From assembly GCF_006345805.1 (NCBI RefSeq), contig NC_043007.1:41602001-41666000 (forward strand): a stretch of DNA of 64,000 nucleotides, given 5' to 3'. The notes under the pieces were generated by a model, which saw only the letters and a program-made list of their open reading frames with translations, was not told the DNA's origin and made no database searches. Each line of letters begins with the position of its first letter. The stretch's first letter is position 1. Made by a program: the position numbers and the translations under genes. The DNA is from Octopus sinensis (Eukaryota). Shown one piece after another: positions 1 to 64,000 of this stretch.

Positions 1-235
1 CCATGCTGGAGCACCACCTTTAGTCGAGCACATCAACCCCAGGATTTATTCTTTGTAAGCCTAGTACTTATTCTATCGGTGTCTTTGGCCGAACCGCTAA
101 GTTACGGGGACGTAAACACACCACCATCGGTTGTCAAGCGATGTTGGGGGACAAACACGGATACACAAACATATACATGCACACACACACACAACACACA
201 CACACACACACACGCATATATATATGTATGTATGT
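1..235 (-). mobile_element. SINE family A (tRNA-like head, internal microsatellite), 3' half; first unit of a 371-bp tandem duplication
   Basis: Positions 1-~190 are identical to 372-~560; same tail sequence (ccagcatgg..cagtcaaa) as other family A copies. Confidence 0.8.
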
Positions 236-298
236 ACCACAGTATTAACCAGACTATCGGATGTTGTTATACATCGCTGGTCACAATGCGCTTCGCAT
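236..298 (-). mobile_element. SINE family C3 3' tail fragment
   Basis: Reverse complement resembles the tail of the copy at ~60480-60530 (acatccgatagtctgg..aatac.gtg). Confidence 0.45.
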
Positions 299-351
299 AA
301 GAAGAGCGACTGTTTATTGTTTGGCTGATGCGAACAGGTATAGAAATATTT

Positions 352-549
352 TTTTACTCTTTTGACTGTGGCCATGCTGGAGCACCACCTTTAGTCGAGC
401 ACATCAACCCCAGGATTTATTCTTTGTAAGCCTAGTACTTATTCTATCGGTGTCTTTGGCCGAACCGCTAAGTTACGGGGACGTAAACACACCACCATCG
501 GTTGTCAAGCGATGTTGGGGGACAAACACGGATACACAAACATATACAT

Positions 550-606
<57 letters not shown>

Positions 607-823
607 CATACATTCAAACATACATACATACATACATACATACATACATACATACATACATACATACATACATACAACGAGCTTCTTTCAGTTTCTGTCT
701 ACCAAATCCACTCACAAGGCTTTGGTCGGTCTGAGGCTAAAGTAGAAGACACTTGCCCAAGGTGCCACGCAGTGGGACTGAACCTGGTCCCATGTGGTTG
801 GTAAGCAAGCTACTTAACCACAC
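352..823 (-). mobile_element. SINE family A, near full length
   Basis: Minus strand: gtgtggttaagtagcttgc head with B-box-like ggttcagtccc, ccttgggcaagtgtcttc core, internal (TG)/(TA)/(TATG) microsatellite and conserved tail; more than 10 copies in the window. Confidence 0.85.
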
Positions 824-1039
824 ATTAACTTAACTTTTATATCTTTATTTGCATACCTAACAACCAGGCTGCCTACCGTGTAATATAAAATCACTTTCTT
901 CAGTTTATCGTACTTCTGTAAGGAAAAAATCCACAACCTCCCGCCCCGATGAACCACTATTGTTCCTGAAAGTTGTTTTTCATTTTTTCTACAGATTGCT
1001 TGAAGCTCACCTTTTTCCTACACCTCGATCTTTGGATCT

Positions 1040-1268
1040 TACATTATATATATAGTTAATCCAAACAAGAAAACACAGAAAAAAAGAGAAAAAAACAGCA
1101 ACGCGAGGACGTGGAACAATTAAAGTATTATTGACGCTCAGGAAAGAAGGGAAGGAGGGTTTAACGTTTCGAGCGGAGCTCTTCGTCGGAAACAAGGAGA
1201 AGGAAAGATCCCAAGAAGGGAAGACAGAGGAAAAAATATTTTTGCTGGTGGTGCTCAAGAGATCACAT
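1040..1268 (-). mobile_element. Penelope-like element terminal-repeat fragment carrying a minimal hammerhead
   Basis: Contains the CYGAYGA-A-stemII-GAAACGT motif characteristic of Penelope-like element terminal repeats; boundaries approximate. Confidence 0.55.
1159..1193 (-). ncRNA. Minimal type-I hammerhead ribozyme motif
   Basis: Minus strand GUUU-CCGACGA-A-GAGC(UCC)GCUC-GAAAC-GUU-AAAC: stem I GUUU/AAAC, stem II 4 bp, palindromic ACGU stem III, NUH triplet GUU. Confidence 0.7.
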
Positions 1269-1280
1269 GTTGAAAGAGAT

Positions 1281-1282
<2 letters not shown>

Positions 1283-1361
<79 letters not shown>
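1283..1361. repeat. (TA)n microsatellite
   Basis: Direct reading. Confidence 0.95.
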
Positions 1362-1709
1362 GGTTCCGGGTTCAGTCCCACTGCGTGGCACCTTGGGCAA
1401 GTGTCTTCTACTATAGCCTCGGGCCGACCAAAGCGTTGTGAGTGGATTTGGTAGACGGAAACTGAAAGAAGCCCATCGTATATATGTATATATATGTTTG
1501 TGTGTCTGTTTTTGTCCCCCACCCCACCCCCAACATCGCTTGACAACCGACGCTGGTGTGTTTACGTCCCCGTAACTTAGCGGTTTGGCAAAACGACCGA
1601 TAGAATAAGTACTAGGCTTACAAAGAATAAGTCCTGGGGTCGATTAGCTCGACTAAAGGCGCTGCTCCAGCATGGCCGCAGTCAAATGATTGAAACAAGT
1701 AAAAGAATA
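1362..1709 (+). mobile_element. SINE family A, 5'-truncated, CpG-rich copy
   Basis: ggttcagtcccactgcgtggcaccttgggcaag ... ccagcatggccgcagtcaaatgattgaaacaagtaaaaga. Confidence 0.85.
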
Positions 1710-1715
1710 TACACA

Positions 1716-1765
<50 letters not shown>

Positions 1766-2177
1766 AACACACACACACAAACACACACACACAGAAAGGA
1801 AAGGAACGATTGTTTCTCTACACCTCTCAAAGTGGGCGCTACCGCCCCGCGGTGGGTGTTGAGAAGGTCCAGGTGGGTGCTGGTGTCTAAGGAGGCGATG
1901 GTGAGGGGTAGAGAAAAAGGAAGTATAGAGAGGAAGGCAGTGAATTGGGTGACGCTATGAATTTATTTTATCATAGTATTGTATACAAATTATATATTAT
2001 ATTAAATACCTACCAAATGATTCATAGTATATATAAATTAGTAAAATATAAAATATTTATTTATACATAATAATAAGGGTGGGGGCGCTGAGGGTATAAT
2101 GTGGCTATGAGAAGGCGGTGGTCCCAAAAGTTTGAGAACCTCTGCTCCACAGATACATTAACACACCGGACAAAACG

Positions 2178-2330
2178 CTTGGCAGCATTTCGTCCGTCTT
2201 TACGTTCTGAGTTCAAATTCCGCCGTGGTCGACTTTGCTTTCATCGGCAAGACTTCCCCCCTCCCTACCAAAAGCCAATAAGTACCAGTTGAGTACTGAG
2301 GTCGATGTAATTGACTAACACTTATAACTG
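2178..2330 (+). mobile_element. SINE family B
   Basis: acgttctgagttcaaattccgccg.ggtcgactttgc.tttcatc ... aagtaccag core shared with more than 12 copies. Confidence 0.75.
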
Positions 2331-3115
2331 CTGGCCTTGTACCAAAATTTGAAACAATTACGATTACTATTATTATTGTTGTGTCTGGGGAACGAAGTAT
2401 TATTATTGTGTTTGATAAACAACCTACCTTCGACCGGTAAAAACAAACTGTGTGTGTGTGTGTGTACACGCATAAGAGGAGCGGCTGTTTATTGTTTGGT
2501 TGATGGGTGAATGGATGAACGGGTTGTTTACGGTATCCTGTTGAAATTGAGAACCTCTGATGCTACTGCATACGTAAAAGAATAACAAACAGATAAAGGG
2601 AGTTAGAGAGATGAGATGAAGTGGTAGACAGTGATAGTTCCACGAGAGAGGCAAAAAGTGGTCGAATATAACAAACAGTTGCCGTTATCATGAAATTCAT
2701 ATATCTCCACAAGTAATTGATTTTTGAAACGGCAGAGGAATATATATTTAAGAACATTTTGAAATCATAGTTCCTAAACACCTTTTTTCAGTTTCTCGAA
2801 GCTGTCGTTTAGCGACAGGTCATTCTTAAGATTAAAAGACAAAAAAAACTTACTACTCTCATGTTGAAAGCTATTGATGATGTTGATAGAGAGCACATGG
2901 AATCTTGTGATGGTAATTACTGGACAAGTAATAACTTCATATATACAGCTGTTATTACTCTAAAAAACACTGATGAAACAGGTGCTAATTAAATTGGGAA
3001 ACAAAACTTGAAGAAACATCAACAATCTTTGCCACCATACTGAATGATTAATCATGATAATAAAATGTAAATGGAATAATGAGCTTTCACTTCACCTATT
3101 ACATCTTATGCAAAT

Positions 3116-3435: not shown

Positions 3436-3750
3436 CAATTATCTATTTATTATCACAATATTTATTTATTATGCAAATAAAAAACAACAAAACTCTACAG
3501 TGACACTGCACACTAAGTTCTTGAGAGAAGGCATGTTTCTTTAAAACACAAGCTCAGGATACTGAGCAAAAAATTTTGTTATCATAGAAAAATATTCAAG
3601 TGAGACAGTATAAATCACAAGTTTGCTTCCAATACACAGGCATTATAGAGAGACAAGGGAGGAAAACATTACCATTAAGAAAGCCTGCTTATTCTTAGTG
3701 CACATTTTGAAGAGTGCAGTTTGATTTTTAGTTATTTTTTCGAAGCTATA

Positions 3751-4811
3751 ATGGAAGTGAAAAGGAGCATATTTGGCATATTTTGCTTTATGAGTTCAAT
3801 AAGGGCAACAATAGAACTGAAAGTGTGAGGAATATTAATGCAGAATATGGAGATCAGACAATAAGCTTAAGCCAGTGTCAACGGTGGTTCCAGAAATTCT
3901 GAGCTGGAAACTACAGCCTAGAAGATGAGCCTTATCCTGGAAGATCTGAAAAGCTCGACAAGGACATCCTGCAAACCCTGGTGGAACAAAATCCCATTGT
4001 AACTGTTGAGGAACTAGCAAAGAAGCTTGGATTTGGTCAGTCAACCATTCATCGACACCTGCATGCCATCGGAAAAGTCAACAAATTGAGTTAATGGGTT
4101 CCTCACAAACTTTCCAAGTCTAATTGCATGCAGAGAATGAACGTAGGTTCTTTGCTGTCACGTCTCATGAATGAACCCTTTTTTTAATTAAATAGTGACT
4201 GGTGACAAAAAATGGGTTCTCTATAAAAATGTCAAGCGCTGGAGACAGTGAGTAAGGAAAAGGGAAGCACCAGTGCCCTAGACTAAAGAAAGGTTTAGTT
4301 CACTTTGAACTTTTAAACCCAAATCAAACAATAACAAAGGAGATATACTGCAAGCAGCTCAAGCGGCTAAAGCCAGCACTACAAGAAAAATGACCATCTT
4401 TGGTTTCAAGATGAAAGGTGTTCTTCCATTAGGATAATATTCGGCCACATACAGCAAGGATGACATTCCAAAAGCTGGAGCAGTTTGAATGGGAAACAAT
4501 GCCCCACATACCATATTCACTGGACATTACCTCATCCGATTACCATATATTCTGCAGTCTTCAAAATCATTTGGACAGAAAAAATATGAATTCTGTAGGT
4601 GAGATCAGAAGAGTACTGGAGGAGTATTTTTCATTACGGACAAGTGAATTTTGGAAGTGGGGCCTTGCAAGTCTACCAGATAGATGGAAGATCATTGTAG
4701 AAAATGAAGGAGAGTATATCTTGGATTAAAAAAGAACTTTGTTATCTTAATTTTGAAAAATAAAAGAAATATACCCCCCCCCCCGCATTATTTATGGGAT
4801 GACCCAATATA
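3751..4811 (+). mobile_element. Degenerate mariner transposon (transposase pseudogene plus right TIR)
   Basis: Reads MEV..HIWHILLYEFNKG, CQRWFQKF, WVPHKL, YSLDITSSDYHIF (YSPDLAPSDYHLF-like) and EGEYILD*, with stops and frameshifts. Right TIR gcattatttatgggatgacccaata+TA at ~4785-4811; left TIR not found. Confidence 0.9.
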
Positions 4812-24892: not shown

Positions 24893-26261
24893 AAAGACAG
24901 ACAGACAATATGTGAGAACTGGGTATGCTCAATATAGAAAATATATAGTAATGCTCAAAAGGATTTAAACTTAAACTCTGAATTCTTCTTTATCTAGAGC
25001 AAGGACCACACCATCAAGAATAGCTTTAAGAAAAATCTAAATCAAGCTGATATGGAGGTAGTAAAGGGAATAAACACAGTGAGGCTTGACATAGATATAT
25101 TTATATGCAGCATAAAATATACAGAATAAAAGTACAGAATAGAATATGAAGAAAATACATAATTTCTTAACTTGACAACTGTTTCAGGAAGCGTAGAGTT
25201 GCATAATAATCTTAATAATCATAATTTGCAGATGAAACATGCAAATAATTATGGTTATGTAACTGGTAATCAGTCACATGAAGATATTGCATTATGTCTG
25301 GCTCCCTTCATCAAGAGGAGATTGGTAAATGCAATTTATACAGTAGGGTTAGCAAATATAAATGGTTAAAGAGGAGAGGAAACAGAACAAGTTCAAGGCT
25401 GAGGGAAAGAGGAGAATGGTTAACTTCTAAAACATGTGGAGAAATGAAGAAGAATAAAACTAGAAAAAGCAGAGACAAGGGGAGAAGATAAATATGAAAC
25501 CAGTGTAGTGCAAGGTAATGTCACAAGTGGTAAAGATAGTGTTAAGCAGACCATAAATCATTTAAGAATATCAACTGACCAAACAAAGAGGCAGGAAATG
25601 ATGAGCATTGAGGTGTAAGAGTAGCAGAGAAGGAAAATATGTTGAAAGAAAGAGAATATGCTACAAGGAGAGGGATAATTGATACTTGGATAAATAGAAA
25701 AGAGATTCAGCAACAAGTAGGAGAAACTATGAAAACTTTACAGAGAACAACTGTAGAATAAAATTCATGTTTACATGAGAAGATTACATCAGAAAACCTA
25801 TCGAGTAATGTGGTATTATAATGGCATAGAATAGCAAGCAATTCTCTGTAACAAATTGCAAACACAATGGTTAGCATTGTATGGGGTACTCTTACAAACT
25901 ATGGACAGGACAAGGTAAAGGGAATGTCCAGGGAGTGACTGGTTACATACCCATAACTTTCTGCACATTTCATCTGTAAATTATACTTATAACAATTATG
26001 TAGATCTGGGCGTTCTAAAACAGTTGCTGAGTTAAGAAATTACATATTTTGTTCTATTTCTTATTCTGTACAGTTAGTGCTCCATGTAAATATATTCATA
26101 TGAAGCCAGTGTTTGTATCCATTACTATATATATATATATATATATATAGATAGAGAGAGAGAGAGAGAGTAAGGGGGAGATAGAGAGTGAGAGAGAAAG
26201 GGGAGAAAGAGAGATACATCAATTGAGCTTCTTTCAGTTTCCATGAACTAAATCTGATCAG

Positions 26262-27985
26262 GCCCACACCCAGGCCAGGTTCCTTAACTACCCTGACTAT
26301 GATATAGCGCATCAGATGGAGGTTGTCATGGATGCTCCGGCCTGGCATGGTGCACGTGTGTGCCTTGTCAACCAGTTTCTTGATGACAAGCGCCAACATC
26401 TTGGCTAACACCTTGGCCAAAATTTTCAAGTTTGCGTTGAGCAGAGTGATGGGCCTAAAGTTTACTATGTTCCCTTTGTTTGGATCTTTCTTCAGCAGTG
26501 TTACAGCTCTTCTGCTTACAAAACTGAGGATGTTCCCATTTTGCTGCCAGTTGCAGTACAGTGCTGCCAAGATGTCTCCAAACAATTCTGGCATACAACT
26601 GTAAAGCTGATAGAGTAGACCATCCAAACCCGGTGATTTGTGCCTCGAGCATTCGGCCATTACGTCCTGCACTTCTGCCGTCGTGATGGCACCTTCACAC
26701 CACCCTGCCTCTCTTGTCAAGAGTCGTGGCAGGCTGTGTAGGTAGGTACTGAAGTCCACCATGTTTGCTCACCCACTACTCATCCTGAACAGTCAGGCAA
26801 AATGCTGTTAAAAGGCCTCACACATTTTACTTAGTTCGAGTAATTCGTGCCCCAGTTCATCTACCAGAGACCAAATGATGGCTTTGTTGTGCCTCTGCTA
26901 CCCAGGCCTCTCATGCAGCTCCAATATCTTCATTCCTTAGAGCACGCATCCTAGCTCTGACAACACACCCTTCGTGTTTGGCATTGAAGTGTTGGTCGAG
27001 GGCCAATCTCACCACCAAAACGTCAGATACAATGCCACTTCTAATTGCTTCTTCTAGCTTCTTAACTAGGTCACCCTCTACTCTGTTTCTACCTATGGCT
27101 AGTGTTTTGCAATACCTAATCGCTTCTGCTTTTATTGCTCTCTTGAGTGCAAACCACCATTTGTTGTTGATGATGGCTTCTGTCAAAGCCCTCTTTACTA
27201 ACATTCTAATCCAGTCTCTAAAAACCTTTCTCAATGGGAAAGATGCATTTAGTTTCCAGTACCCGGGACCCTGCCTATGTGTCTTACCTAAGTCTAGCGT
27301 ACATGTCACAAGTTTATGATCTGTGTAGCTATGTGGAATTGTGGACACCCTACGCTATCTCTATCTATTGTCCTACACAGTATCCTATCTAGATATGATC
27401 TCAATGACCTGATGCGGTTGCTCCATGTCCACATTGGCGCATTCAGGTGGTCGAGTTGGTACTTGTCAGACAGTTGAAAGCGTCTGAGCAGGTCTCTGAG
27501 GCATTTGTATCCCTGTCTATTCCTATGTCTACCCACGTAGTCTACATGTGTGTTCAAGGTAGCATTCCAATCCCTCATTAAAAGTAAGGGATGAGATGTT
27601 CCTAGGAATACTTCTTGACGTTGAAAGAAATCCAGTTGACCTGTTAAAGATGGTGCATTGACTGATACGGGTCAAAAAGCGTACTCATTGCGGTCATCAA
27701 CATTTCGGACGACCAGTCTACTCTCCAGGTCTACAAATATTGTCTTTCCTTCGAGATCCAGACTCTTGCGAATAAGTACCGTGGTGCCACTACCACTGAT
27801 TCTGGGCAGACAGGGAGAAAAATAAATGTTAAACTGTCCGCCAAACATGGACTTTAGGGCCTGCGGATTATGGAGTCTGGTCTCACTTATGGCTATGATT
27901 TCTAACTTGTGTGACTTTATGTCATTTAAGAAGTACCCTTGTTTCCCTGGTACCAGTCAATATCCATAGGATGACAGCTGTTTCA
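26262..27985 (-). mobile_element. Tx1/L1-clade LINE ORF2 fragment (AP endonuclease plus start of reverse transcriptase), degenerate
   Basis: Reads IAISETRL, DWNATL, YLDRIL, TDHKLV, GPGYWKLNAS, KSPGLDGL, NFRPITLLNANLKILAKVLA, PGRSIHDNLHLMR; stops and frameshifts; 3' part missing. Confidence 0.9.
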
Positions 27986-47540: not shown

Positions 47541-48833
47541 TGAGGGGTGTTCATTAAAGATTTCCCCTGACCCACTTCCCAAAGACTGGGATAAACGAAA
47601 CTGGGCATAATTATGAGTCTGAGTCCTACTCTACATAGCCACCACCAATGGTGACACACTTCTCCCATCGTTTTATGCAGCTATGAAGACCTCATCTATA
47701 GAAGTCAATAGGTTGCATCGAGAGCCAAGACCTTACCTCGGAAGTTCAGCATCTGAAATGTGTTTCCTTTTCAAAAAGGACTTCATGGCTGGAAAGAGGT
47801 GGAAGTCAGATGGTGCAAGGTCAGTAGAGTAAGGAAGATGAGGAAGGATTACATATCCACAGGAGTGTGCTTTCATCTGGGTAACACGCACATTGTGAAT
47901 TGGGGAATTGTCTTGGAGGAGGCAGACTCCTTTGGTCAGCATGACATGCCTCTCATCTTTGATGCTGTCCAGCAATTTCCACAACAGAGAAGCATAATAT
48001 GCCCCATTAATTGTGGTGCCCTTTGCTAGAAAATCCATCATCACTATTCCACATTGGTCTCAAAAGACAGTGAGTCTCACCTTGCCTGCTGAGGGTTGGA
48101 TACAAACCTTCTTTGGGGGTGGTGAGTTATCATGCTTCCATTGCTTTGATTGGACTTTAGTCTCAGGATCATAGTGATGGACCCAGGTTTCATCCAGTGT
48201 GATAAATCTGCCGAAAATGTCCTTCTCATTTTCTTGGCACATGCCAAAAGAGCTTGAGAGCAATTGACTTGATACTGCTTCTGAAAAGGTGTGAGCATCC
48301 GGGGAATCGACTGTGCAGACATCTTCTGCATGTGCAAATGGTAATGGATGATTTTTTTCCACAGACCATTGACTTATCTTCACTTCTTGGGCTAATTGCC
48401 AAATAGTTATGTGGCAATCCTCCAAAATGGCAGCTTCCACTTTATGAATGATGCCATCATCAATAGCAGAATGTGGCCATCCAGGAATATGAGTAGTTTC
48501 CACCGATGTCCAACCACATTTGAATTAGCAATGCGAGTGCTTGACTATATTGTATGATGGTGCATGGGCACCATAAACGTCTTTCGTCTCATCGAAAGCC
48601 TCTTCTGGTGTACATCCTTTCAAGTATAAGAACCTGATAACCGATCTGTATTCAACTGCTTCCATTGCTACACCATAGTCCACTTCAGCAGCCATAAAAG
48701 ACAAATGAATACTAGTGGAAAGCTGCAATTAACAATGTGACATGTAGAGACATGTATGATTATACCTGTATAAGTTCCATTTCCTCCAATAACCAGAAGT
48801 GGGCCTAAAGAAATCTTTAGTGAACACCCCTCG
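47541..48833 (-). mobile_element. Full-length (~1.29 kb) mariner transposon with degenerate D,D34D transposase
   Basis: ~24-bp TIRs (t/c)gaggggtgttca(t/c)taaagatttc at both ends; left TA flank; ORF pieces EYRSVIRFLYLKG, ITLDETWVHHYDPETK, LLQDNSPIH, YSTDLAPSDFHLF in different frames. Confidence 0.93.
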
Positions 48834-54283: not shown

Positions 54284-55954
54284 GAGGGGTCACTAAACTT
54301 TTTTCACAGTGGGTCAGATAACGGAGAATGATGAACGCAGGCTGCATAACCATTTTGTTCAATACAATACAGTGAATACACAAAAAAATAAAGACAACCA
54401 ACATATTTCTCCGTCTTTTACTTGTTTCAGTCATTTGACTGCGGCCATGCTGGAGCAACGCCTTTAGTCGAGTGAATCGACCCCAGGATTTATTCTTTGT
54501 AAGCCTAGTACTTATTCTATCGGTCTTTTTTGCTGAACCACTAAGTTACAAGAGCATAAACACACCAGCATTGGTTGTCAAGCGATGTTAGGGGGACAAA
54601 CACAGACACACAAACTCTCACACTATACATATATACGATGGGCTTCTTTCAGTTTCCGTCTACCAAATCCACTCACAAGGTTTTGGTCGGCCCAAGGCTA
54701 TAGTAGAAGACAAAGTGCCATGCAATGGAACTGAACCTGGAACTATGTGGTTGGTAAGCAAACTACTTACCACACAGCAAAATTTATCAAAGAAGGCAAC
54801 GTTAGCATTAAGATAGTTATATCACACACAATGCACACATATCCAAATCTCACAAACTAAATAGCAAAAAAGGTTAGTGAGATTTGTGAAACTGGTGTTT
54901 AGCTTTTGAGATATCATCAATACTTGCTTTGGAATTGCTGCATTCAACCAAGAGAATTGCTTTTAAATGTTCATCAGTCAACCTCGTTTGATGTGCTAAC
55001 TTTGCATACTTCATTTTTGAAAATGCTTGCTCACAAACATTAGTTGTTCCTAACACTCATGCCATACTAGAGGCGAATTTCTTCAACTTTGAAAACTCAT
55101 CATCAGGTAAGCAGCGACAAAGTTCAACAAGTTTTCCTTCTCTGTGTTTCTCTTTCAACAAGTCACTTGCTTGCAAATCAATGAGCTCCAACTATAGTTC
55201 AAATGGCACATCATCAAGGTTACAAACAAATGGATTCTGGAACAGAAGAATTTCACTCAATTCTGTCAAGATCTGAAAATCTTTCAAAAAATTACTTATT
55301 TAAGTCACAAATAATCTTCTTCAGAAACTGGAGGTTGATACCTTCTGTGATTCCAGCATGAAACTTTGAAACACTGAAAATGAGAGAAGTTTCCTCTTTC
55401 CACTTGTGTTTCAAACAATGATAGCTTTCCCCAAAATACTTTGATGATTCTGTAGAGATCACAGATACGGTTATCCTTTCCCTGAAGTTTCAATTTCAAT
55501 TCATTCATGTGGAATGTGATATCAACCAAAAATGACAACTTTAACAGCCCGATAGGATCTGACAGAAGTGGATCAGCTCTATCCTTTTTGATGAGAAAAA
55601 CATCTATTTCTCTTCAGAGCTTATAAAAATGACACAGGACTTTACCACAGCTGAACCACCTCAATGCTGTGTAATAAGGCAAGTCACAGAATTCAGAATC
55701 AATTTCTTCAAGAAAAACCTGGAACCGGTGTTGATTAAGTGCTTGAACTTGAATGCAGTTCACCACAGAAACGACTGGTTTCAGTATGCAAGAAATATTT
55801 AAGTCTTTCCTACAGAGTGCTTGCTGATGTACAATACAGTGTATAAACAGAACACCTGGGAGTTGAAGATCTTCCTATTTAGTCCTGATCTGTCCCACCA
55901 GACCCTTCTTCACTCTGGATCCACCTCGCCTGTTCAATGAAAGCAATACAATCC
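54284..55954 (-). mobile_element. hAT transposon (SPIN/GTF2IRD2-like), 3' two-thirds, degenerate
   Basis: Reads CIVHQQALC, YTALRWFSCGKVL, FLVDITFHMNELKLKLQGK, GTTNVCEQAFSKMK..RLTDEHL; terminal gaggggtcactaaact at ~54284; SINE A inserted at 54410-54778. Confidence 0.85.
54410..54778 (-). mobile_element. SINE family A nested in the hAT 3' region
   Basis: Aligns with 38470-38833. Confidence 0.85.
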
Positions 55955-56420
55955 CATGTTCTAGAGGCAGCGATTATCACTTGGAAATATAAGGGTGAGG
56001 ATGTCTTCATTCCACGTATCCCGTTAATGCAATCTGACCTCCCTTTGAATTTAAACGGCTCCAGTTCCCAGTGAGACTAACTTTTGCTATGTCAATAAAC
56101 AAATCTCATGGACAATCTATCAAGGTTGTTGAACTTAACCTTGCTTCTCTCATGGGTAGTTATATGTAGGATGTTCGCGAGTTGGAAAGCCCAAAACTCT
56201 TTATTTGTACACCAGTTAAAGGACACCCTGAAAACATTGCATATTTAGAAGTTCTACAAAATTGAACCGCGATTGATTTCAGGATTTCTTTTAATAACTT
56301 TGTTTATATTTATGTCATCTCATAGAATTTTTCAGAAAATATATTTTTTTATCAGAATGAATATATTTATTTCCTTTAACATTCCTTAAACTTCCGAGCA
56401 ACGCAGGATACTTAGACTAG
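55955..56420 (+). mobile_element. Helitron 3' end (PIF1-like helicase C-terminus plus CTAG terminus)
   Basis: HVLEAAIITWKYKGEDVFIPRIPLM, FKRLQFPVRLTFAMSINKSHGQS, SHG.LYVGCSRV; 3' ccgagcaacgcagg...CTAG|T at 56417-56421. Confidence 0.88.
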
Positions 56421-56679
56421 TGTGTGTGTGTGTGTGTGTGTGTGGTGTGTATACACACACACACGTACGTATATATACACACACATACACGTGTTCTACT
56501 ATGTTTGTGTAAACGTGTATGTATTTTATATACACATATCTATATCCATATATCTCTTTCTCTTTCTTTCTCTCCTTCTCAGACAGGCAGATAGACAGAC
56601 AGACACACAAACATACATATACTCATCTACTAATTTCCTTCCTTCCCACTATATTTCACACCTTTTATCTATGTTAGAG

Positions 56680-56895
56680 GAAGATGGGTTGGCAAAACCG
56701 TAAAAGTGCCGGAAAAAAATATTTTACGGTAATTATTCCGTCCCTCTACGTTCCGAGTTCGATTCCCACCGGAGTCAACTTTGCCCTTCGTTATTCTGAG
56801 ATAAAATAAAGAACCACTCAAATACTGGGGCTGATTTAATCACCGTACATTTCCAACCCACAAATTTGTGACACATTATTATTATTATTACTATT
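56680..56895 (+). mobile_element. SINE family B, diverged
   Basis: acgttccgagttcgattcccaccggagtcaactttgccc core; (ATT)n tail. Confidence 0.6.
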
Positions 56896-56959
56896 AGCAG
56901 CAGCAGTAGTAGTGGTGGTAGTGGTAGTAGTAGTATGATGAACAGTTTTCATGTACGTA

Positions 56960-57135
56960 TTAGTTTGGCAATTGCGCGTCACGTGAAATTCTCTTGACAA
57001 ACTCAGTGCTGAAGTTTGCAGGAATTTGGTTAACAGCAATAATGTCAAGGTCCTTGATATTATATAAGCGGCCCACATTAAGAAATGGGGGTAAAACAGC
57101 AAATAAGACACGCAGCACACACATAATATAAGCGT
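56960..57135 (-). CDS. Candidate 5' exon encoding a signal-peptide-like N-terminus
   Basis: Acceptor tatatttcatcacag|A at 57135. Two frames are open: (M)NAYIMCVLRVLFAVLPPFLNVG..LPN* if spliced from ATG-A|GTAAGT at 57370-57367, or MWAAYIISRTLTLLLLTKFLQTSA.. from ATG 57078 with a weak donor at 56957. Confidence 0.33.
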
Positions 57136-57380
57136 CTGTGATGAAATATAATATACACAAGAGTTTTTGTGCGTGCTCAAACACGCACGCATACATCTGT
57201 GTTTAGAAACGTGTGCGAATGTACAAGCAAATATAATGTTATATTTGTGTGTGTATGTATAAAGCACACACACACACAAACACACACATACACAAATGTA
57301 TATAAAATGCAAAGGGATTCCCGTCGATTTCTATGATGAGTAAGTTCGATCAACGAAACAACTTACTCATTGTATGAGCG

Positions 57381-58063
57381 TGTAGTGATGCTACAGGGGG
57401 TCACCAATTGTAACGTGAAAGGATCTATCATCGAAGCACTGGCAGGGTGTCGAGATCCTTTCTAGTCACATACAAAAATTCTTGTAGAAAACAAACAAAC
57501 GAAACTCAGGTTAAAGGTGAACAGACAACTTGGTTTATTGATTCATAGTATGTACCAAGTCTTCTGGGGGATCGGCAAGCCTTCTATTTTCTGCAGCACC
57601 ACCACAATATTCTGGTTGCCGTACTTCGCACTCGGAGGGGAGCCCTGTAGTGATGCTACAGTGTAGGGTTCGGCGCGCATGCGCAGAATGGGACTACTTC
57701 CGGGTGGCCACCGGAAGTCTTCCCCATGCGCATGTGCGGGAAAACATCTCTCGAGCCCGCGAACCTCAAATCGCTCTCTTCGGCTCAAGACAGCACTGCG
57801 ATCGGTCACGGTTTTCCTGGCTCTGACAGCCACACACCAACTTCAACCAACTTCAACCAACCTCAACGACCAACACCAGCAGTATATCAGAGGCTGTCTA
57901 TTCCCCCATCAGACAACGTACAACCATGAATCAATAAACCAAGTTGTCTGTTCACCTTTAACCTGAGTTTCGTCTGTTTGTTTTCTACAAGAATTTTTGT
58001 ATGTGACTAGAAAGGATCTCGACACCCTGCCAGTGCTTCGATGATAGATCCTTTCACGTTACA
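57381..58063 (+). mobile_element. Rearranged Gypsy-type LTR retrotransposon derivative (683 bp)
   Basis: TG...CA ends; TSD AGCG (57377-57380 / 58064-58067); PPT GGAGGGGAG 57634-57642 before a 418-bp LTR 57646-58063 with AATAAA; inverted LTR 3' end 57409-57546 followed (minus strand) by PBS TGGTGACCCC 57406-57397. Confidence 0.88.
57675..57735. promoter_or_regulatory. Palindromic NRF1-like/ETS-like motif cluster in the LTR U3
   Basis: GCGCATGCGC 57675-57684, ACTTCCGG 57696-57703, CCGGAAGT 57711-57718, ATGCGCAT 57726-57733. Confidence 0.5.
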
Positions 58064-58424
58064 AGCGTGTATGTGTCCGAATATTCTACAGTGACGAACC
58101 ATTGACTTAATTTCCAGGGAGAATCAGCCCGACAGTGTGTGATAAGACTAGAACTTTGAATTTACCAGTACAATCCAACCGACAAGCTTACAAACCCCGT
58201 TTTCGTTTGCCGTATTTTCAGTTATAAGAACACTGGCGGCAATCTTTCGGAATTAGTCGACGACGTCTTTCACCCATATCTATATCACGAGGGAATGTTG
58301 TGTGGATGAATGACGTCTACTAATACCGAAAGATTGTCACACTAGCACCACATTCTTCGCAGCGAGACCAATACCTGGGTCCACATTATTGCGAAAACTT
58401 CTTAATCACTTGGTGTTACCTGCA

Positions 58425-58463
<39 letters not shown>

Positions 58464-58546
58464 GTTTTAAAATACCTTGTGGTTTTGGAGTGTACGTATT
58501 TAGCAAACTAACTACTAAAACATTTACTTTTACATTCTAGGTAACT

Positions 58547-58975
58547 ATGGCACCCAGTGGTAAAACAAAAATTATAAAGAAGCATACATCAAATTTAATA
58601 TCAGTGGAGGGTAAAATGAAAAAAGTTCTCCCTACAATGTATTGTTTGCCAAAGTTTCATTTAAGTTCAGAGATTGAAGCCAAGCTTTCTGAAACGACAT
58701 TTCTGTAACTAGATGATCCTCATCAAATTGACAAACATCAATTGCATTCCAAACAGAAAATAAATGAAACATATTCGACTTAATCAGAGTGGGTAGTTAT
58801 AAAGACAAAATGAAACTAATTTACTTTACTACCCACAAGATAGCTCCTAAAAACTGCAAAAACTAATATACCCACATATGGTTGCTGAAATATTCATAAT
58901 TTATGACAAGCAAAGGAACTGCTTAATCAGCCAATGTGAAATGATAACGTTTGTTGAAAGATACCTTATAATTAT
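58547..58975 (+). mobile_element. Decayed Buster-type hAT transposase N-terminal fragment
   Basis: MAPSGKTK..AYIKF, PTMYCL, RLKPSFLKRHF (cf. MKPSKLKRHL), HMVAE; heavily frameshifted. Confidence 0.45.
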
Positions 58976-60280
58976 AAACGATATACACGGTAGTTCAAAA
59001 ATATTAGAGGCTACGCTAGAAATTTTTACTTGAGTTTATACACATGTAAGAAGTATATAACTGAATAACTGATGGGTGTACGAAATGAAGCAAGAAAATG
59101 AAGTTGTTGCGGAATTTATACAACTGTTTACATATCTATATCCTTAAAGTTGACTACCAATAAGCAAGTGAAAGGCGGAAAGCAAAGACTCATGCGGATG
59201 AAACTTGTTAATGTATAACTGAAATGATGAAGAGCTCCCTGGAACTGACAAAGAAACCACCTATTTATTTTTTCTTGGGGTTGCCAATATATATATACCT
59301 ATCTCAAAGCTTAACTGTGTCACCGCGATTGAAAATTAAGTCAAGTTTATCTAAGTTAACCTTTGCTTCGTGTAAGATAATGGCGAATTTCGAGCAGGTT
59401 AAACGAAAGGATTTTACGTGTACATTTAGAGAACAAAGGAGACACACGTAAAGATTCAAGTTTCGATCACTTCATATCTATCAACTGGTACATACAAGAT
59501 ATAAATGAAGGATTCGAATTTTTAAAACAATTTGTTTTGTCAAGCCTTGGTGAGCACAACAAAAGAAGACATATATGAAGTTGTACATAGTTTCTGTGTG
59601 AAAAAAGGTCTTTCTTGGTAAATGATAGTCGGTTGCTGCATAACCGATGCAGTTCCCACAATACTGGGTTTTCTTAACAGTGTCTAATGTAAAGCGTGAT
59701 GTAAAAAACATGAACTGTATGGTTAATAGGTATGCATTGTCTTTGAAGACACTGCCTCCATTTCTCAGATCTGTTTTCTATAACGTACGAACGATGAACT
59801 TCGTCAAATCTAGTCTTCTGAACACAAGTATACTGCTTCTGTTGTGTAAAGAATAAAATGCTGAGGAAGATGTGCTTTTGTTTCACGCAAAACCGAGATG
59901 GTTTTCAATAGTCGTAGTCGTTGCAATGATGAAAGATTAATCTAAAGAATTCTTTTCGTTCGAGAAAACAGAATAAAGTGATCAAGTTCACTTCTCATAA
60001 ACGGATTGCAAAGCTAACCTTCCTAAACGATTTTTTTCTTATTACTCAATGCAGTTAACAAGATACTTTAAGGCATCTAGTTACCGTTATACAGACTTCT
60101 TAGTCAACAAATTAAGAGCATTTTGGATGAAACTTGAGCTGTAGAACGATAAGCTGGAAATGGGTCATGACAATGTTTTAGAGAATATGAGTCAAATTTC
60201 TACACTACTACAAGTGGAGGACAAAAAATAACGTCAGTATGTTGGACCAGGCCTACTTCGTTTTGATATGTAAAAGCACG

Positions 60281-60530
60281 TGGCTAAGTGGTTAGGGCGT
60301 TGCACTCAAGATCGTGGTTTCGATTCTCAGACCAGTTGTGTTCTTGAGTAAAACCCCTCACTTCACGTTACTCTAATCCACTCAAGTGTAAATGGGTAAA
60401 CCTGCGACGAGCATTACCCCCTTTGAAGAGGAATGTTGGCCTGTTCGCCTAACCAACGGGATGGCATCATTCAAAAGCAACAGCAATGCGAGGAAGCAAC
60501 GACATCCGATAATCTGGTCGATACAGTGAT
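60281..60530 (+). mobile_element. SINE family C3
   Basis: tggctaagtggtt A box, ggtttcgattc B box, ccactcaagtgtaaatgggtaaacctgcgacg core. Confidence 0.7.
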
Positions 60531-60534
60531 ATAG

Positions 60535-60880
60535 TGAAGGCGCATGGCTGAGTGGTTATAGTGTCGGGTTCACAATCATGAGGTAGTGAGTCCGATTCCC
60601 AGACCGGACTGTGTGTTGTGTTCTTGAGCAAGACACTTTATTTTACGTTGCACCAGTTCATTCAACTGTAGAAATTAGTTGCGACGTCACTGATGCCAAG
60701 CTGCATCAGACTTTGCCTTTCTTTTGGAACACTGGTGGCGTGGAGAGGGGAGGCCGGTATGCAAGGGCGACTGCTGGTCTTCCATAAAAACAACCTTACT
60801 CGGACTTGTGTGCCTTAGAGAGGAACTTTCTAGGTGCAATCCCATTAACATTCATGACCAATGGGGTTTTTTACCCCTTT
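60535..60880 (+). mobile_element. SINE family C2
   Basis: Aligns with the reverse complement of 3116-3435. Confidence 0.8.
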
Positions 60881-60929
60881 ATAGTGACATAATGAAATAG
60901 TGTACTATTTTCCTATTATTAATGGATTG

Positions 60930-61340
60930 AATCATCAATTCATTTCATACCTCTTTAAAATTAATTTCAGATCAGTTTCCAAACAATTCCCAAGATAGAT
61001 TTGTATTAATGATACCACAATGAAAGCACTTTCTGTAACCCCTTCCCAAACATCATTCTGGTGTCCCACGGTGAACTCTTTTACATCTGTAAAAAAGAAA
61101 TGTGTGAAGCACCGGTAACTGTTCCCGCTGTGAATAAAAGGTTTCAACCACTAAAAACAAACTTCGTTGCCAGATTGTCAACTGAGAATGATATGTGGTT
61201 ATGTCCCTGAAATTATGCCTAGAATTGAGCTGGTGCGCAGAAAGAGCCATGCTAATCATTCTTATTGGAAATTTAACATTGAATGTAATGAAATAACTGA
61301 TAAATGAGACGTGTATTGCTTGTTCCATAGTATCCATTCA
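60930..61340 (-). mobile_element. Possible decayed Tc1/mariner-superfamily transposase fragment
   Basis: FFTDVKEFTVGHQNDVW resembles the F(S/T)DEK.FTV...QND.W first catalytic motif; only one motif seen. Confidence 0.3.
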
Positions 61341-61473
61341 TTTTACACTATACTTTTCACAAGGGATACGTCAACATTACTAGACAGAACGAACTAGTGT
61401 GTTAATAATACATAGCTATAAGCTGAATCAATTCTCTAAGGCAGCCTTGATTCCAACAGTGACCATCCATGCG

Positions 61474-63206
61474 ACCATTTTCATTTTTAAATAATTTTTC
61501 ATCTCATTTACATTCGTTTTATTCTTTTTGTCCCCACTGTGTTCTTGTCTGTCCTTGTGGTGTCCCTTTCTGTGTTTGGAGCTTTATGCCTAATAAAGAT
61601 ATTGAATTTGCATCACGCAACCCAGTTCTGAAGTTTGCTTTTTGTTTGTTTTTGTGCTGGTGGTTTTCTGTGGTATTTGAGTGTTCTGTGCTGCATTGCA
61701 ACGTTGTGTATGCTTGTGCTGTCCTTCAGCGTTTTGAGGGAAGCATGACGAGTAAAAAAAAATGTTCTACTCAACCTTAGCGGATCGGAACTGTCAACAT
61801 CTGAAGATGAACTGTTAAGGACTATTGGAGTTATGGATAGGGAATTGGAAGGAAGAAAGAGGAAGTTCGCAGGCGTCGCCCGAGAATCGGATGACAATGT
61901 GGAGATTGAAGTGGAAAAATTCAAGAAGTTATTAAGGCGGGACGGTTACAACGTGCAAGTAATCCCCCGCATGATACGACAAAAATAATGAAAGGAAGAA
62001 CAGTGACGTACAAAACCTACTCGATTTAGAAGGAAAATAATTGAGCACGTGACAATTGAGCAAGTAGAGAAGGCGCTGCGGCCAATCTGGCAAGAAATAA
62101 TATATCATACCAGAGGATTGATATTCGGAGAAGTTGAAGTCAGGTTCAAAAATGAAAACACTCAGCAACACCACTAGTACTTCTACCCATGTACCCGGGA
62201 CAGAGAGCGTCACGGGTAAGGGTAGAAGGAATTCCACCAGAGACAGATGTGGCCTAGATAGCAGCTCCCGTCTTGGTTGATACTGAGGACAAAATAGCGG
62301 TGATCCAGGCCACAGAAACGAAAAGCGTGAATTGGAAAGGCCAAGGTTCGAACATGATAATTCAAGGTTCAAAAGAAACAATAGAAGAAATGGTGGAAAC
62401 GGTGACTGTGAGCGGAACCATAATAAATGTTAGGGTAGAGGGCAGAATCCCTCGGCATTTTAAATGTGGCCAGAAGGGCCACATAAGAGCAAAATGCCCT
62501 CCACCGGATAAAAAAGTGGAGAAGCCACAAGAGAAGCCCCAGAAAGGACAAGAGGAGGAAGAAATGGTTTCAGAAAAAGTAAAAGAGGAAGAATGGAAAA
62601 ATACCTGAAAGAAAAGGGGGAAAAAGACAAGTCCGACACACACACAGAACTTCACCCATCAACTACACAAGGCCCTCCCATACCCTCTTTGTCCCACCTT
62701 CGCCCTGCATCACAAAAACAAAAGAAAAGATCACATTTACACAATGACCCACAAACTTACCCTCCCATTGGCTGTTTTGAGTGTGTAATTAATTTATGAT
62801 GATGAACTGTTTGAAAAGACAATTGAATGGGAAAATACAGTCCATGTTGATGTAGAGGCTGAGGACGGAGTGGAAGGTATAGTGCTATTAATAACGGAAC
62901 AGCAAAGGATGGAAATAGAGAGATGCAAAGGGGAATATTGACTGTGGAAAGTTGACTTTAACAAAGAAAAACTTCCACAGGATATAGAATTTAAAGAACT
63001 TCAAAAAAAGGTATGGGATAAACATAATGGAGAACAGAGGAAAGGAAGCAAGTGATGTTACTTGAAGGGGCAAGTAACACCATTTTCATTTTACATGTTT
63101 CCATCTTTCATTATATCATACATTTTTTTTTTTTATTGCAATTTTTGTATGTCCCCAATGTGATGTATGTCCCTCTTTGTTGGCCCTGCATGGGTAATAA
63201 TAAAAT
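61474..63206 (+). mobile_element. ORF1-only (half-L1-like) non-LTR element flanked by ~125-bp diverged direct repeats
   Basis: Gag-like ORF1 with zinc knuckle, no endonuclease/RT after it; repeats 61474-61603 and 63079-63206 both start accattttcatttt and end taataaa. Confidence 0.6.
61745..63055 (+). pseudogene. Degenerate gag-like ORF1 with a CCHC-type zinc knuckle (H-x2-C-x4-H-x4-C)
   Basis: ATG 61745; acidic/basic N-terminus; HFKCGQKGHIRAKC at 62456-62497; Lys/Glu-rich linker; ~90-aa C-terminal block ending TGA 63053-63055; several frameshifts and stops. Confidence 0.65.
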
Positions 63207-63271
63207 TAATCACATTTGAATTTGTCTGAACGTTTTAAGAATGAATAGATATGGTATATCGTATGGATTAT

Positions 63272-63568
63272 GAAGGCGTGTGTCTCAGTGGTTAGGGTTT
63301 TGGCTCACGATGACGAGGTCGTGAGTTCAATTCACGGCGATGCGTTGTGTCCTTGAGCAAGACACTTTATTACACGTTGCTTTTGTCCACTCGGTTAGCA
63401 AAAATGAATAGTACCTGCATTTCAAAGGGCTAGACTTGTCACACTCTACGTTAAGGGGTTCACGTGTTTGTGGAGTGCTCAGCCACATGCACGTTAATGC
63501 CACGAGCAAGCAGTTCCGTTGATAGGAACAACTGGATCCCCGCTTCGTCGTAACCGATGGAGTGCCAC
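63272..63568 (+). mobile_element. SINE family C1
   Basis: Reverse complement aligns with 38137-38460. Confidence 0.8.
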
Positions 63569-63824
63569 ATTGTATGGATTGTTACATGAACTGCGTTTGG
63601 CAAACATCTGCAGAACGATAGATAAAAATGTTACGTTGTGCTTTTTAATATTCTGAGTTCAATTCCTGTCGATCTCAGTTTATCATTCTCTCTTTCTGAA
63701 GTCGTAAAAACAAGTGTCAGTCAAGTACTGGTATCTATATAATTTTCTCTTTGGAAATTTGTGGCTTTGTATTTTTATTTGATAACAATATTCTATATTT
63801 CTCCGAGCAGAACGTTTGCTATCA

Positions 63825-64000
63825 TCTCTCTCTATATAAACGGCAGTTTGTCTGTCTGCGTGTCTGTGTGTCTGTTAGGTTGTACCCTCACCCTGACCAC
63901 GGCTTTCAACCGATTCTGATGAAACTTGACACACACGTAGCCCAATGTCATAATTCAAAACTAACGCAGCGAAAATTTTGAAAAGTTCCCCCAGTTCTGG
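63825..64000 (+). mobile_element. Non-autonomous Helitron, 5' part (runs off the window)
   Basis: Near-identical to 22379-22550; starts A|TCTCTCTCTATATAAAC. Confidence 0.85.

What the first reader, a model, noticed from the sequence alone, without database searches (positions are those of the whole stretch)
57381..58063. Miniature LTR retrotransposon with an inverted U5-PBS cassette, forming a 138-bp hairpin at a candidate 5' UTR
Seen: AGCG TSD | first 16 bp of LTR | inverted PBS (TGGTGACCCC) and inverted last 138 bp of LTR (57409-57546) | 99 bp of internal end with PPT | complete 418-bp LTR | AGCG. The arms 57409-57546 and 57926-58063 differ at one base, so the event is young. Established: TG..CA ends, a 4-bp TSD and a PPT are Gypsy-like, and TGGTGACCCC is the start of a tRNA-Trp primer site. 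Inference: a double deletion plus inversion (template switching or autointegration) produced a TRIM-sized element with inverted instead of direct repeats. It lies 10 nt upstream of the candidate ATG, so read-through RNA would carry a long duplex (ADAR, siRNA or piRNA substrate; translation block). If multicopy, it would be an unusual non-autonomous element type.
Basis: partly seen in the sequence, partly recalled or inferred. Interest (0 to 1): 0.8.

Follow-up and report, generated by a model that had tools for sequence, protein, structure and literature searches.

The report
Rearranged dead LTR retrotransposon insertion
This is a real but broken 683-bp copy of an LTR retrotransposon in what is probably a cephalopod genome, in which the piece next to the primer site was copied backwards; it is a one-off replication accident as far as can be seen, not a new kind of mobile element or a demonstrated gene-regulatory hairpin.

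Summary
From left to right it reads: AGCG, a 16-bp LTR tip, the reverse-complemented primer-binding site, an inverted 138-bp LTR end, 99 bp with a polypurine tract, a complete 418-bp LTR, and AGCG again. The two arms differ at one base.

One feature is new. The inverted similarity continues about 48 nt past the perfect arm at about 70% identity (1 of 20,000 random controls reaches it). This fits a homeology-guided template switch of the nascent minus strand.

Neither junction involves an LTR end, so autointegration is rejected.

The unit has no sense-oriented PBS and no 5' promoter LTR, so it cannot replicate as a TRIM-like element.

I found no second copy in the window or in any searchable collection. 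The host genome itself could not be searched.

The "candidate ATG" at 58071 opens only seven codons, and no exon was found nearby. The 5'-UTR claim is therefore unsupported.

The RNA hairpin is thermodynamically real, but nothing shows that it is transcribed.

Verdict: a defective, rearranged LTR-element insertion of a known kind with an uncommon layout. Interest is low to moderate.

The parts
57377..57380 (.). Left copy of the 4-bp target-site duplication, AGCG
   Evidence: The same 4 bp occur at 58064-58067. The identity in fact runs 8 bp (AGCGTGTA).
57381..57396 (+). U3 tip: the first 16 bp of the LTR (TGTAGTGATGCTACAG), in direct orientation. It contains a 5-bp stem (TGTAG/CTACA).
   Evidence: (family D5, 100% identical to 57646-57661).
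57397..57406 (-). First 10 nt of the primer-binding site, reverse-complemented. On the minus strand it reads TGGTGACCCC.
   Evidence: It matches the complement of the tRNA-Trp 3' end printed in bioRxiv 10.1101/400127. It occurs only once in the window.
57407..57408 (-). AT spacer that separates the LTR end from the PBS in the parent element
   Evidence: Inferred from its position between the inverted LTR end and the inverted PBS.
57409..57546 (-). Left arm: the inverted copy of LTR positions 281-418, which is most of R plus U5
   Evidence: (I1). There is one mismatch, at 57498.
57547..57594 (-). Homeologous tract: about 70% identical to the reverse complement of LTR 234-280 (the TATA/Inr stretch). 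I propose it as the landing site of the template switch.
   Evidence: (anchored extension score 12, reached by 1 of 20,000 random 40-mers and 0 of 20,000 shuffles).
57547..57645 (+). Presumed 3' end of the parent's internal region (99 bp). All three forward frames are open, and it carries no recognisable coding signal.
57634..57642 (+). Polypurine tract GGAGGGGAG, 3 nt upstream of the LTR
   Evidence: read directly from the sequence. Its function is inferred.
57646..58063 (+). Complete 418-bp LTR. U3 carries GCGCATGCGC (57675) and the paired motifs ACTTCCGG/CCGGAAGT (57696, 57711). It also has a 10-bp tandem repeat (57836-57867), a TATA-like box (57883), an Inr-like TCAGA (57909) and AATAAA (57933) followed by a GT-rich stretch.
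   Evidence: The division into U3, R and U5 is inferred from these motifs.
57926..58063 (+). Right arm of the inverted repeat (LTR 281-418)
58064..58067 (.). Right copy of the target-site duplication, AGCG

Best explanation
This is a single defective insertion of an LTR retrotransposon. It keeps the complete 3' LTR, the last 99 bp of the internal region with the polypurine tract, and the extreme 16 bp of the U3 end. Between these lies a backwards copy of the parent's R/U5-AT-PBS(1-10) segment.

Proposed origin, by two template switches while the bottom (minus-sense) strand was being made:
1. The nascent strand copied the LTR and 99 nt of the internal region.
2. Its 3' end, which is homeologous to LTR 234-280, annealed to minus-sense LTR DNA next to the PBS. 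The most likely partner is its own 5' end with the tRNA primer still attached, that is, a snap-back.
3. It then copied LTR 281-418, the AT spacer and 10 nt of the primer.
4. It jumped, without homology, to the last 16 nt of the U3 end and ran off.

The product had both integrase-recognised ends, and it was inserted with a 4-bp duplication.

In its present state it cannot replicate. At most it acts as a solo-LTR-like promoter/poly(A) unit pointing rightwards. It would form a 138-bp RNA hairpin only if some outside promoter reads across both arms.

Shown: the anatomy, the homeology and the absence of LTR ends at the junctions. Inferred: the order of the switches, the timing before integration, and any activity.
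For: - Anatomy and arm identity.
- The inverted cassette includes AT and the PBS. The template was therefore the 5'-LTR/PBS context (or minus-strand DNA with its tRNA), not the 3' LTR.
- The homeology lies exactly at junction 2, on the side expected if the nascent minus strand was the invading end. It is reached by 1 of 20,000 random controls.
- Both exact LTR termini and the 4-bp duplication are kept, and only 16 bp of the U3 end survive. That is expected if integrase had to recognise the aberrant cDNA.
- The tRNA-Trp match of the PBS start.
- Deleted and inverted proviruses, attributed to reverse-transcriptase misalignment and template switching, are documented for HIV-1: PMC9278108 and PMC12657518.
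- Template switching that creates complex LTR-retrotransposon insertions is cited in PMC6894440 (Sabot and Schulman 2007).
- No second copy in the window.
Against: - Junction 1 (LTR 16 | PBS 10) shows no microhomology.
- Copying of the tRNA would normally run 18 nt, not 10.
- The invading 3' end would carry a terminal mismatch and a 1-nt bulge.
- The parent element was not found. "Internal end" is therefore an assignment, and what preceded 57547 in the parent is unknown.
- Nothing here separates a reverse-transcription accident from a later replication-based rearrangement at the locus.
- 57594-57609 resembles the reverse complement of the LTR tip (13/16). This hints that the left part could instead be a variant short LTR.
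Confidence: 0.55

Rival explanations
1. The rearrangement happened after integration. A normal full-length element inserted here. Later, replication-fork template switching or break-induced repair (FoSTeS/MMBIR type) deleted LTR 17-280 and most of the interior, and inverted the segment from LTR 281 to PBS 10.
For: - It yields the same end product with the same two switches.
- The homeology at junction 2 would serve just as well.
- The target-site duplication would simply be inherited from the original insertion.
Against: - All four breakpoints would have to fall inside the element and leave both termini exact.
- The left breakpoint lies only 16 bp from the end. That is about a 6% chance if it were uniform over LTR 1-280.
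- From general knowledge, complex rearrangements per locus are far rarer than errors per reverse-transcription cycle.
- A simple fold-back on the adjacent 3' LTR is excluded, because the arm is followed by AT-PBS and not by flank sequence.
Confidence: 0.2
2. It belongs to a multicopy non-autonomous family whose normal architecture is this one (U3 tip, inverted U5-PBS, short interior, one LTR). A related version is that two LTR variants, one short and one long, sit head to head.
For: - Intact ends and a target-site duplication.
- Read on the minus strand, 57609-57397 looks like a roughly 200-nt "short LTR" (16-mer at 13/16, a 47-nt homeolog, then the perfect 281-418) followed by AT-PBS.
- The host genome could not be searched, so copy number is unknown.
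Against: - There is no sense PBS, no upstream promoter LTR, and no R at both ends of any transcript. The standard tRNA-primed cycle therefore cannot copy it (inference from the established mechanism).
- No other copy in 64 kb.
- No match in the viral or metagenome collections, or among predicted proteins.
- The 16-mer resemblance is not significant on its own.
Confidence: 0.1
3. It is an assembly artefact: a chimeric read or a mis-join created the inverted segment.
For: Inverted repeats are a known failure mode of some library and assembly methods. Nothing here can check read support.
Against: - The arms are not identical: one mismatch, followed by a diverged 48-nt extension.
- The arms are separated by 379 bp of sensible sequence.
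- The left arm carries AT-PBS, which exists nowhere else in the window.
- The whole unit is framed by a clean 4-bp duplication.
Confidence: 0.05
4. It was made by autointegration of a linear cDNA into itself.
For: Autointegration is known to give inverted and deleted retroviral DNA forms (general knowledge).
Against: - Autointegration joins an LTR terminus (TG... or ...CA) to an internal target. Here junction 1 is LTR position 16 joined to PBS position 10, and junction 2 is LTR position 281 joined to internal position -99. Neither involves a terminus.
- The products are circles, which integrase cannot then insert with a duplication.
Confidence: 0.02

Closest known systems
Defective retroviral proviruses with internal deletions and inversions (for example the HIV-1 reservoir: PMC9278108, PMC12657518)
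   Same: These are integrated copies with correct outer ends and a target duplication. Their interiors are deleted or inverted, and the defects are attributed to misalignment or aberrant strand transfer by reverse transcriptase.
   Different: This element is a germline retrotransposon relic in an invertebrate. It is extremely reduced (683 bp). The 5' LTR is cut down to 16 bp, and the inverted piece is specifically R/U5-PBS.
Complex LTR-retrotransposon insertions made by template switching (Sabot and Schulman 2007, BMC Genomics 8:247, cited in PMC6894440)
   Same: A non-canonical arrangement of LTR, PBS and PPT modules inside one target-site duplication, explained by switches during cDNA synthesis.
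   Different: From memory, those cases are tandem multi-LTR structures in direct orientation. Here the extra module is inverted.
Solo LTR
   Same: Functionally, what survives is one complete LTR with promoter-like and poly(A) motifs, flanked by a 4-bp duplication.
   Different: A solo LTR arises by LTR-LTR recombination and contains nothing else. This unit carries 265 extra bp: the U3 tip, the inverted PBS-U5-R and the internal end with the PPT.
TRIM (terminal-repeat retrotransposon in miniature)
   Same: Similar size, no coding capacity, and the presence of PBS and PPT sequences.
   Different: TRIMs have two direct terminal repeats, a sense PBS, and many copies. None of these holds or could be shown here.
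Inverted-duplication hairpin loci that silence transposons or feed small-RNA pathways (maize Mu killer; Drosophila hairpin esiRNA loci, for example PMC5392987)
   Same: A transposon-derived long inverted repeat that would give a perfect duplex if transcribed through. The arms cover R/U5, which every transcript of the parent family carries.
   Different: No promoter reading across both arms is evident. Expression and small RNAs could not be tested.

Membership tests
LTR retrotransposon (intact element) | LTR bounded by TG...CA | tested here: met
   57646-58063 begins TGTAG and ends GTTACA.
LTR retrotransposon (intact element) | Two LTRs in direct orientation | tested here: not met
   Only 16 bp of a second LTR stand in direct orientation (57381-57396). 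The other 138 bp are inverted.
LTR retrotransposon (intact element) | Sense-oriented tRNA primer-binding site just downstream of the 5' LTR | tested here: not met
   Only 10 nt of the PBS remain, reverse-complemented, at 57397-57406. Their sequence matches the tRNA-Trp 3' end.
LTR retrotransposon (intact element) | Polypurine tract just upstream of the 3' LTR | tested here: met
   GGAGGGGAG at 57634-57642, 3 nt from the LTR. No function was tested.
LTR retrotransposon (intact element) | Short target-site duplication (4-6 bp) | tested here: met
   AGCG on both sides. The empty site could not be examined.
Gypsy/Ty3 superfamily | Pol domain order protease-RT-RNase H-integrase, and RT phylogeny | not testable with these tools
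   No coding sequence is left. Pfam finds nothing in the ORFs of the unit, and a six-frame protein search found nothing.
TRIM | Two direct terminal repeats flanking a PBS and a PPT | tested here: not met
   as above.
TRIM | Multicopy family in the host genome | not testable with these tools
   One copy in the window. The host genome is in no searchable collection. Pattern scans gave zero hits.
DIRS-like element | Inverted terminal repeats at the very ends, an internal complementary region, and no target-site duplication | tested here: not met
   The left arm starts 28 bp inside the unit, the extreme left 16 bp are a direct copy of the LTR start, and a 4-bp duplication is present.
Autointegration product | An LTR terminus joined to an internal target | tested here: not met
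   Neither junction involves an LTR end.
Hairpin RNA / endo-siRNA or ADAR-substrate locus | A long inverted repeat able to form a stable duplex | tested here: met
   Minimum free energy -397.6 kcal/mol, z = -31. The stem covers both arms and extends imperfectly inward.
Hairpin RNA / endo-siRNA or ADAR-substrate locus | Transcription across both arms, with small RNAs or A-to-I editing | not testable with these tools
   No expression data are available. The LTR's own predicted start (about 57911) lies between the arms, so LTR-driven RNA would carry only the right arm.

The most novel reading that the evidence does not exclude
The unit is an integrated "snap-back" cDNA that now acts as a heritable hairpin locus. 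Read-through transcription would give a 138-bp perfect duplex of the family's R/U5 leader. That duplex would feed small-RNA silencing (in the manner of Mu killer) or ADAR editing in a cephalopod. Alternatively, the architecture is shared by a multicopy family that spreads by a non-standard priming route.
Probability: 0.07. Interest if true: 0.65.

Novelty: new member of a known kind. Interest (0 to 1): 0.25.

Why it matters
If the reverse-transcription reading is right, this is a clean genomic fossil of a fold-back error by a retrotransposon's reverse transcriptase. Both junctions are preserved, along with the homeology that guided one of them, which makes it a useful illustrative case and little more.

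It would matter more if the locus turned out to be transcribed across both arms. It would then be a ready-made double-stranded RNA against the leader of its own family, in an animal group known for heavy RNA editing.

As it stands there is no evidence of expression, of a neighbouring gene, or of further copies.

Tried and rejected
- **Other copies in the window.** BLASTN of the unit against the window (word size 9, E up to 10) found none.
- **Paralogous empty site.** The flanks have no paralogue in the window that could serve as one.
- **Exact look-up of LTR ORFs.** The two longest ORFs of the LTR were looked up in the assembly collection, with no result. The LINE ORF also gave nothing.
- **Six-frame protein search.** All stop-free six-frame segments of the unit were joined into one protein query to catch spurious ORF calls on other copies. 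Nothing scored at E <= 0.001.
- **DNA pattern scans.** I scanned for LTR end + PBS, the LTR end, the LTR start and the U3 palindrome in viral contigs and metagenome contigs. All gave zero hits.
- **RNA genes.** tRNA and Rfam scans of the window found nothing.
- **Autointegration.** Rejected on the junction sequences.
- **Two independent opposite insertions.** Rejected, because LTR position 16 is followed by the PBS and not by an LTR end.
- **In-place fold-back on the 3' LTR.** Rejected, because the arm continues into AT-PBS and not into flank.
[quoted passage not shown] The TATA-like box (57883) and the Inr-like TCAGA (57909) predict a start near 57911, 15 nt outside the perfect arm.
- **ADAR hyperediting or RNA-structure conservation as the cause of the 70% tract.** Rejected. 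The mismatches are mostly transversions and give no G-U compensation.
- **High CpG of the LTR as proof of youth.** Weakened. The whole 56-64 kb neighbourhood is equally CpG-rich.

Full report
**Observation**

- The LTR runs from 57646 to 58063 (418 bp, TGTAG...GTTACA).
- Its first 16 bp recur exactly at 57381-57396, and the next base differs.
- GGGGTCACCA (57397-57406) followed by AT is the reverse complement of AT-TGGTGACCCC.
- 57409-57546 is the reverse complement of 57926-58063, with one mismatch (57498 A against 57974 C).
- 99 bp (57547-57645), with the purine run GGAGGGGAG at 57634-57642, precede the LTR.
- AGCG flanks the whole 683-bp unit. The flanking identity is in fact 8 bp (AGCGTGTA). 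The extra TGTA sits in a local TGTATG-rich context, so I read it as chance.
- TGGTGACCCC is identical to the complement of the last ten bases, CCA included, of human tRNA-Trp as printed in bioRxiv 10.1101/400127. It also begins the PBS primer used for chicken endogenous proviruses in PMC5029493. Ten bases cannot exclude another tRNA.

**What the LTR looks like**

The positions below are read from the sequence. Their functional meaning is inference from general knowledge.
- U3 carries GCGCATGCGC (57675) and the palindromic pair ACTTCCGG / CCGGAAGT (57696, 57711).
- Next come a 10-bp tandem repeat (57836-57867), a TATA-like TATATC (57883) and an Inr-like TCAGA (57909).
- AATAAA at 57933 is followed by a CA and a GT-rich stretch.
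- This predicts R at about 57911-57954 and U5 at about 57955-58063.
- The LTR is therefore a complete promoter/poly(A) unit pointing rightwards. An RNA that starts in it would carry only the right arm of the inverted repeat.

**New finding: homeology at junction 2**

Gapped alignment shows that the inverted similarity does not end with the perfect arm. 57547-57571 matches the reverse complement of 57902-57925 at 17 of 24 positions. A local alignment carries this on to 57594, opposite LTR 234-280.

The extension, anchored at the end of the arm, scores 12. One of 20,000 random 40-mers from the window reaches that score, and none of 20,000 shuffles does.

The mismatches are mostly transversions. 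They give C-A or A-A oppositions rather than G-U, so neither ADAR editing nor RNA-structure conservation explains the tract.

Directly after it, 57594-57609 resembles the reverse complement of the LTR's first 16 bp (13/16; all three differences are A-to-G in LTR sense). On its own this falls within the range of shuffles, and I record it as unexplained.

**How it most likely arose**

In parent coordinates the two novel junctions are:
- junction 1: LTR position 16 joined to PBS position 10;
- junction 2: LTR position 281 joined to internal position -99.

Neither is an LTR terminus, which rules out autointegration.

The arm is followed by AT-PBS, not by flank. It was therefore copied from the 5'-LTR/PBS context, or from minus-strand cDNA that still carried its tRNA. 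This also rules out a simple fold-back onto the neighbouring 3' LTR.

The homeology lies where it would help only if the bottom strand was the growing one. In that reading:
1. The strand copied the LTR and 99 nt of the interior.
2. Its 3' end (...TCCCCCAGAAGACTTGGTACATACT) paired imperfectly with the minus-sense copy of LTR 257-280.
3. It was then extended through LTR 281-418, the AT spacer and ten bases of the primer.
4. A second switch, without homology, took it to the last 16 nt of the U3 end.

I favour reverse transcription before integration, as a snap-back of the minus strand onto its own 5' end. There are three reasons:
- Reverse transcriptase switches templates constantly. Deleted and inverted proviruses are documented products: 1.3% with inversions and a further 1.3% with inversions plus deletions among 88 HIV-1 proviruses in PMC9278108, and aberrant strand-transfer models in PMC12657518.
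- Both exact termini are kept.
- Only a minimal 16-bp end survives, which is what selection for integrase recognition would leave.

A replication-based rearrangement of a full-length insertion in place would give the same product and cannot be excluded.

**What it is not**

- It is not a working miniature element. It has no sense PBS and no upstream LTR promoter, and no transcript would carry R at both ends. The tRNA-primed cycle therefore cannot copy it.
- It is not DIRS-like. The left arm starts 28 bp inside the unit, the outermost 16 bp are direct, and a duplication is present.
- Assignment to Gypsy cannot be tested, because no coding sequence remains.

**Copy number**

The window holds no other copy of the LTR, even with a 9-base word and E up to 10, and no other GGGGTCACCA. 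The following searches also found nothing:
- exact ORF look-ups;
- a six-frame concatenated protein search meant to catch spurious ORF calls on other copies;
- five DNA pattern scans of the viral and metagenome collections.

None of the collections holds the host genome, so copy number remains open.

**Gene context**

- No ATG-initiated ORF of 25 aa or more starts in the next 300 nt.
- The neighbourhood consists of microsatellites and transposon remnants.
- The "candidate 5' UTR" is therefore unsupported.
- One contextual clue does exist. CpG observed/expected is 0.0-0.59 from 3 to 56 kb, and mostly 0.7-0.94 (0.5 in one bin) both before 3 kb and from 56 kb to the end. The element thus sits about 1.4 kb outside what looks like a long methylated domain, possibly a gene body. 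I could not identify its exons or its orientation.

**Host**

The LINE reverse-transcriptase ORFs at 26-27 kb have their best named relatives in the cephalopod Argonauta hians (48-54% identity). The best overall hits are an unnamed NCBI assembly and a JGI metagenome contig (52-62%). The window is thus probably cephalopod, from a species not represented in the protein collection.

**Hairpin**

As RNA the 683-nt unit folds at -397.6 kcal/mol (shuffles -185 +/- 7). The two arms form one long stem that continues imperfectly into the homeologous tract. The duplex is real in principle. Whether any RNA spans both arms is unknown.

**Age**

One mismatch in 138 gives a 95% interval of 0.02-4% divergence, and that mismatch could date from the reverse-transcription event itself. 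The LTR's CpG observed/expected of 0.88 matches its surroundings, so it is not independent evidence of youth.

**Verdict**

This is a real and correctly described structure. It is best explained as a one-off defective LTR-retrotransposon insertion made by template switching, with new evidence for a homeology-guided switch. It is a new member of a known kind, and the claims of a new element type and of a 5'-UTR hairpin are not supported. Interest is 0.25.

Noticed in passing
window 1-64000 (boundaries near 3000 and 56000): CpG observed/expected in 1-kb bins falls into two clear classes. It is 0.76-0.85 for 1-3000, 0.0-0.59 (mostly 0.1-0.3) for 3001-56000, and 0.5-0.94 for 56001-64000. This looks like a roughly 53-kb historically methylated domain, perhaps a gene body in a mosaic-methylated invertebrate genome. 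No exons were identified.
   Followed up: partly
window 26061-27348 (-): A LINE-type reverse-transcriptase remnant (Pfam RVT_1, weak). Its best named relatives are Argonauta hians proteins at 48-54% identity. The best hits overall (52-62%) are in NCBI assembly GCA_024449705.1 and JGI metagenome 3300037538. This suggests the host is a cephalopod.
   Followed up: partly
window 57594-57609: CTGCAGCACCACCACA is the reverse complement of the LTR's first 16 bp at 13 of 16 positions. All three differences are A-to-G in LTR sense. It lies directly after the homeologous tract. It is not significant on its own, but it makes the minus strand 57609-57397 look like a short LTR followed by a PBS.
   Followed up: partly
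window 57672-57740: The U3 region holds a palindromic GCGCATGCGC and an inverted pair ACTTCCGG-GTGGCCAC-CCGGAAGT, followed by a second ATGCGCATGTGCG. From memory these resemble NRF1- and ETS/GABP-type sites of housekeeping or germline promoters. This was not tested.
   Followed up: no
window 58002-58063 (and mirrored at 57409-57470): U5 contains its own 18-bp imperfect inverted repeat with a 26-nt loop, ending exactly at the LTR terminus (pairs I20 and I21). It may be a U5 stem next to the primer site.
   Followed up: no
window 57336-57370: A perfect 11-bp inverted repeat (ATGAGTAAGTT ... AACTTACTCAT, with a 13-nt loop) ends about 10 nt to the left of the insertion point.
   Followed up: no
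window 3732-4726 (+) and 48060-48503 (-): Mariner-like transposase remnants, judged by eye from the translations. Pfam gave no hit for the second one.
   Followed up: no
window 54874-55874 (-): Several ORF fragments that look by eye like a hAT-family transposase C-terminal region. Pfam gave no hit.
   Followed up: no
window 61749-62608 (+): A Gag- or ORF1-like reading frame with a CCHC zinc knuckle (Pfam zf-CCHC, E = 0.002, below the curated cut-off). It is unrelated to the LTR studied here, because no LTR copy lies near it.
   Followed up: partly
window 24-742, 1266-1643 (-), 54439-54731: The same short sequence recurs several times in the window (translations such as SSTSTPGFILCKPSTYSIG...AKLRGRKHTT). 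It is probably a SINE-like repeat.
   Followed up: no
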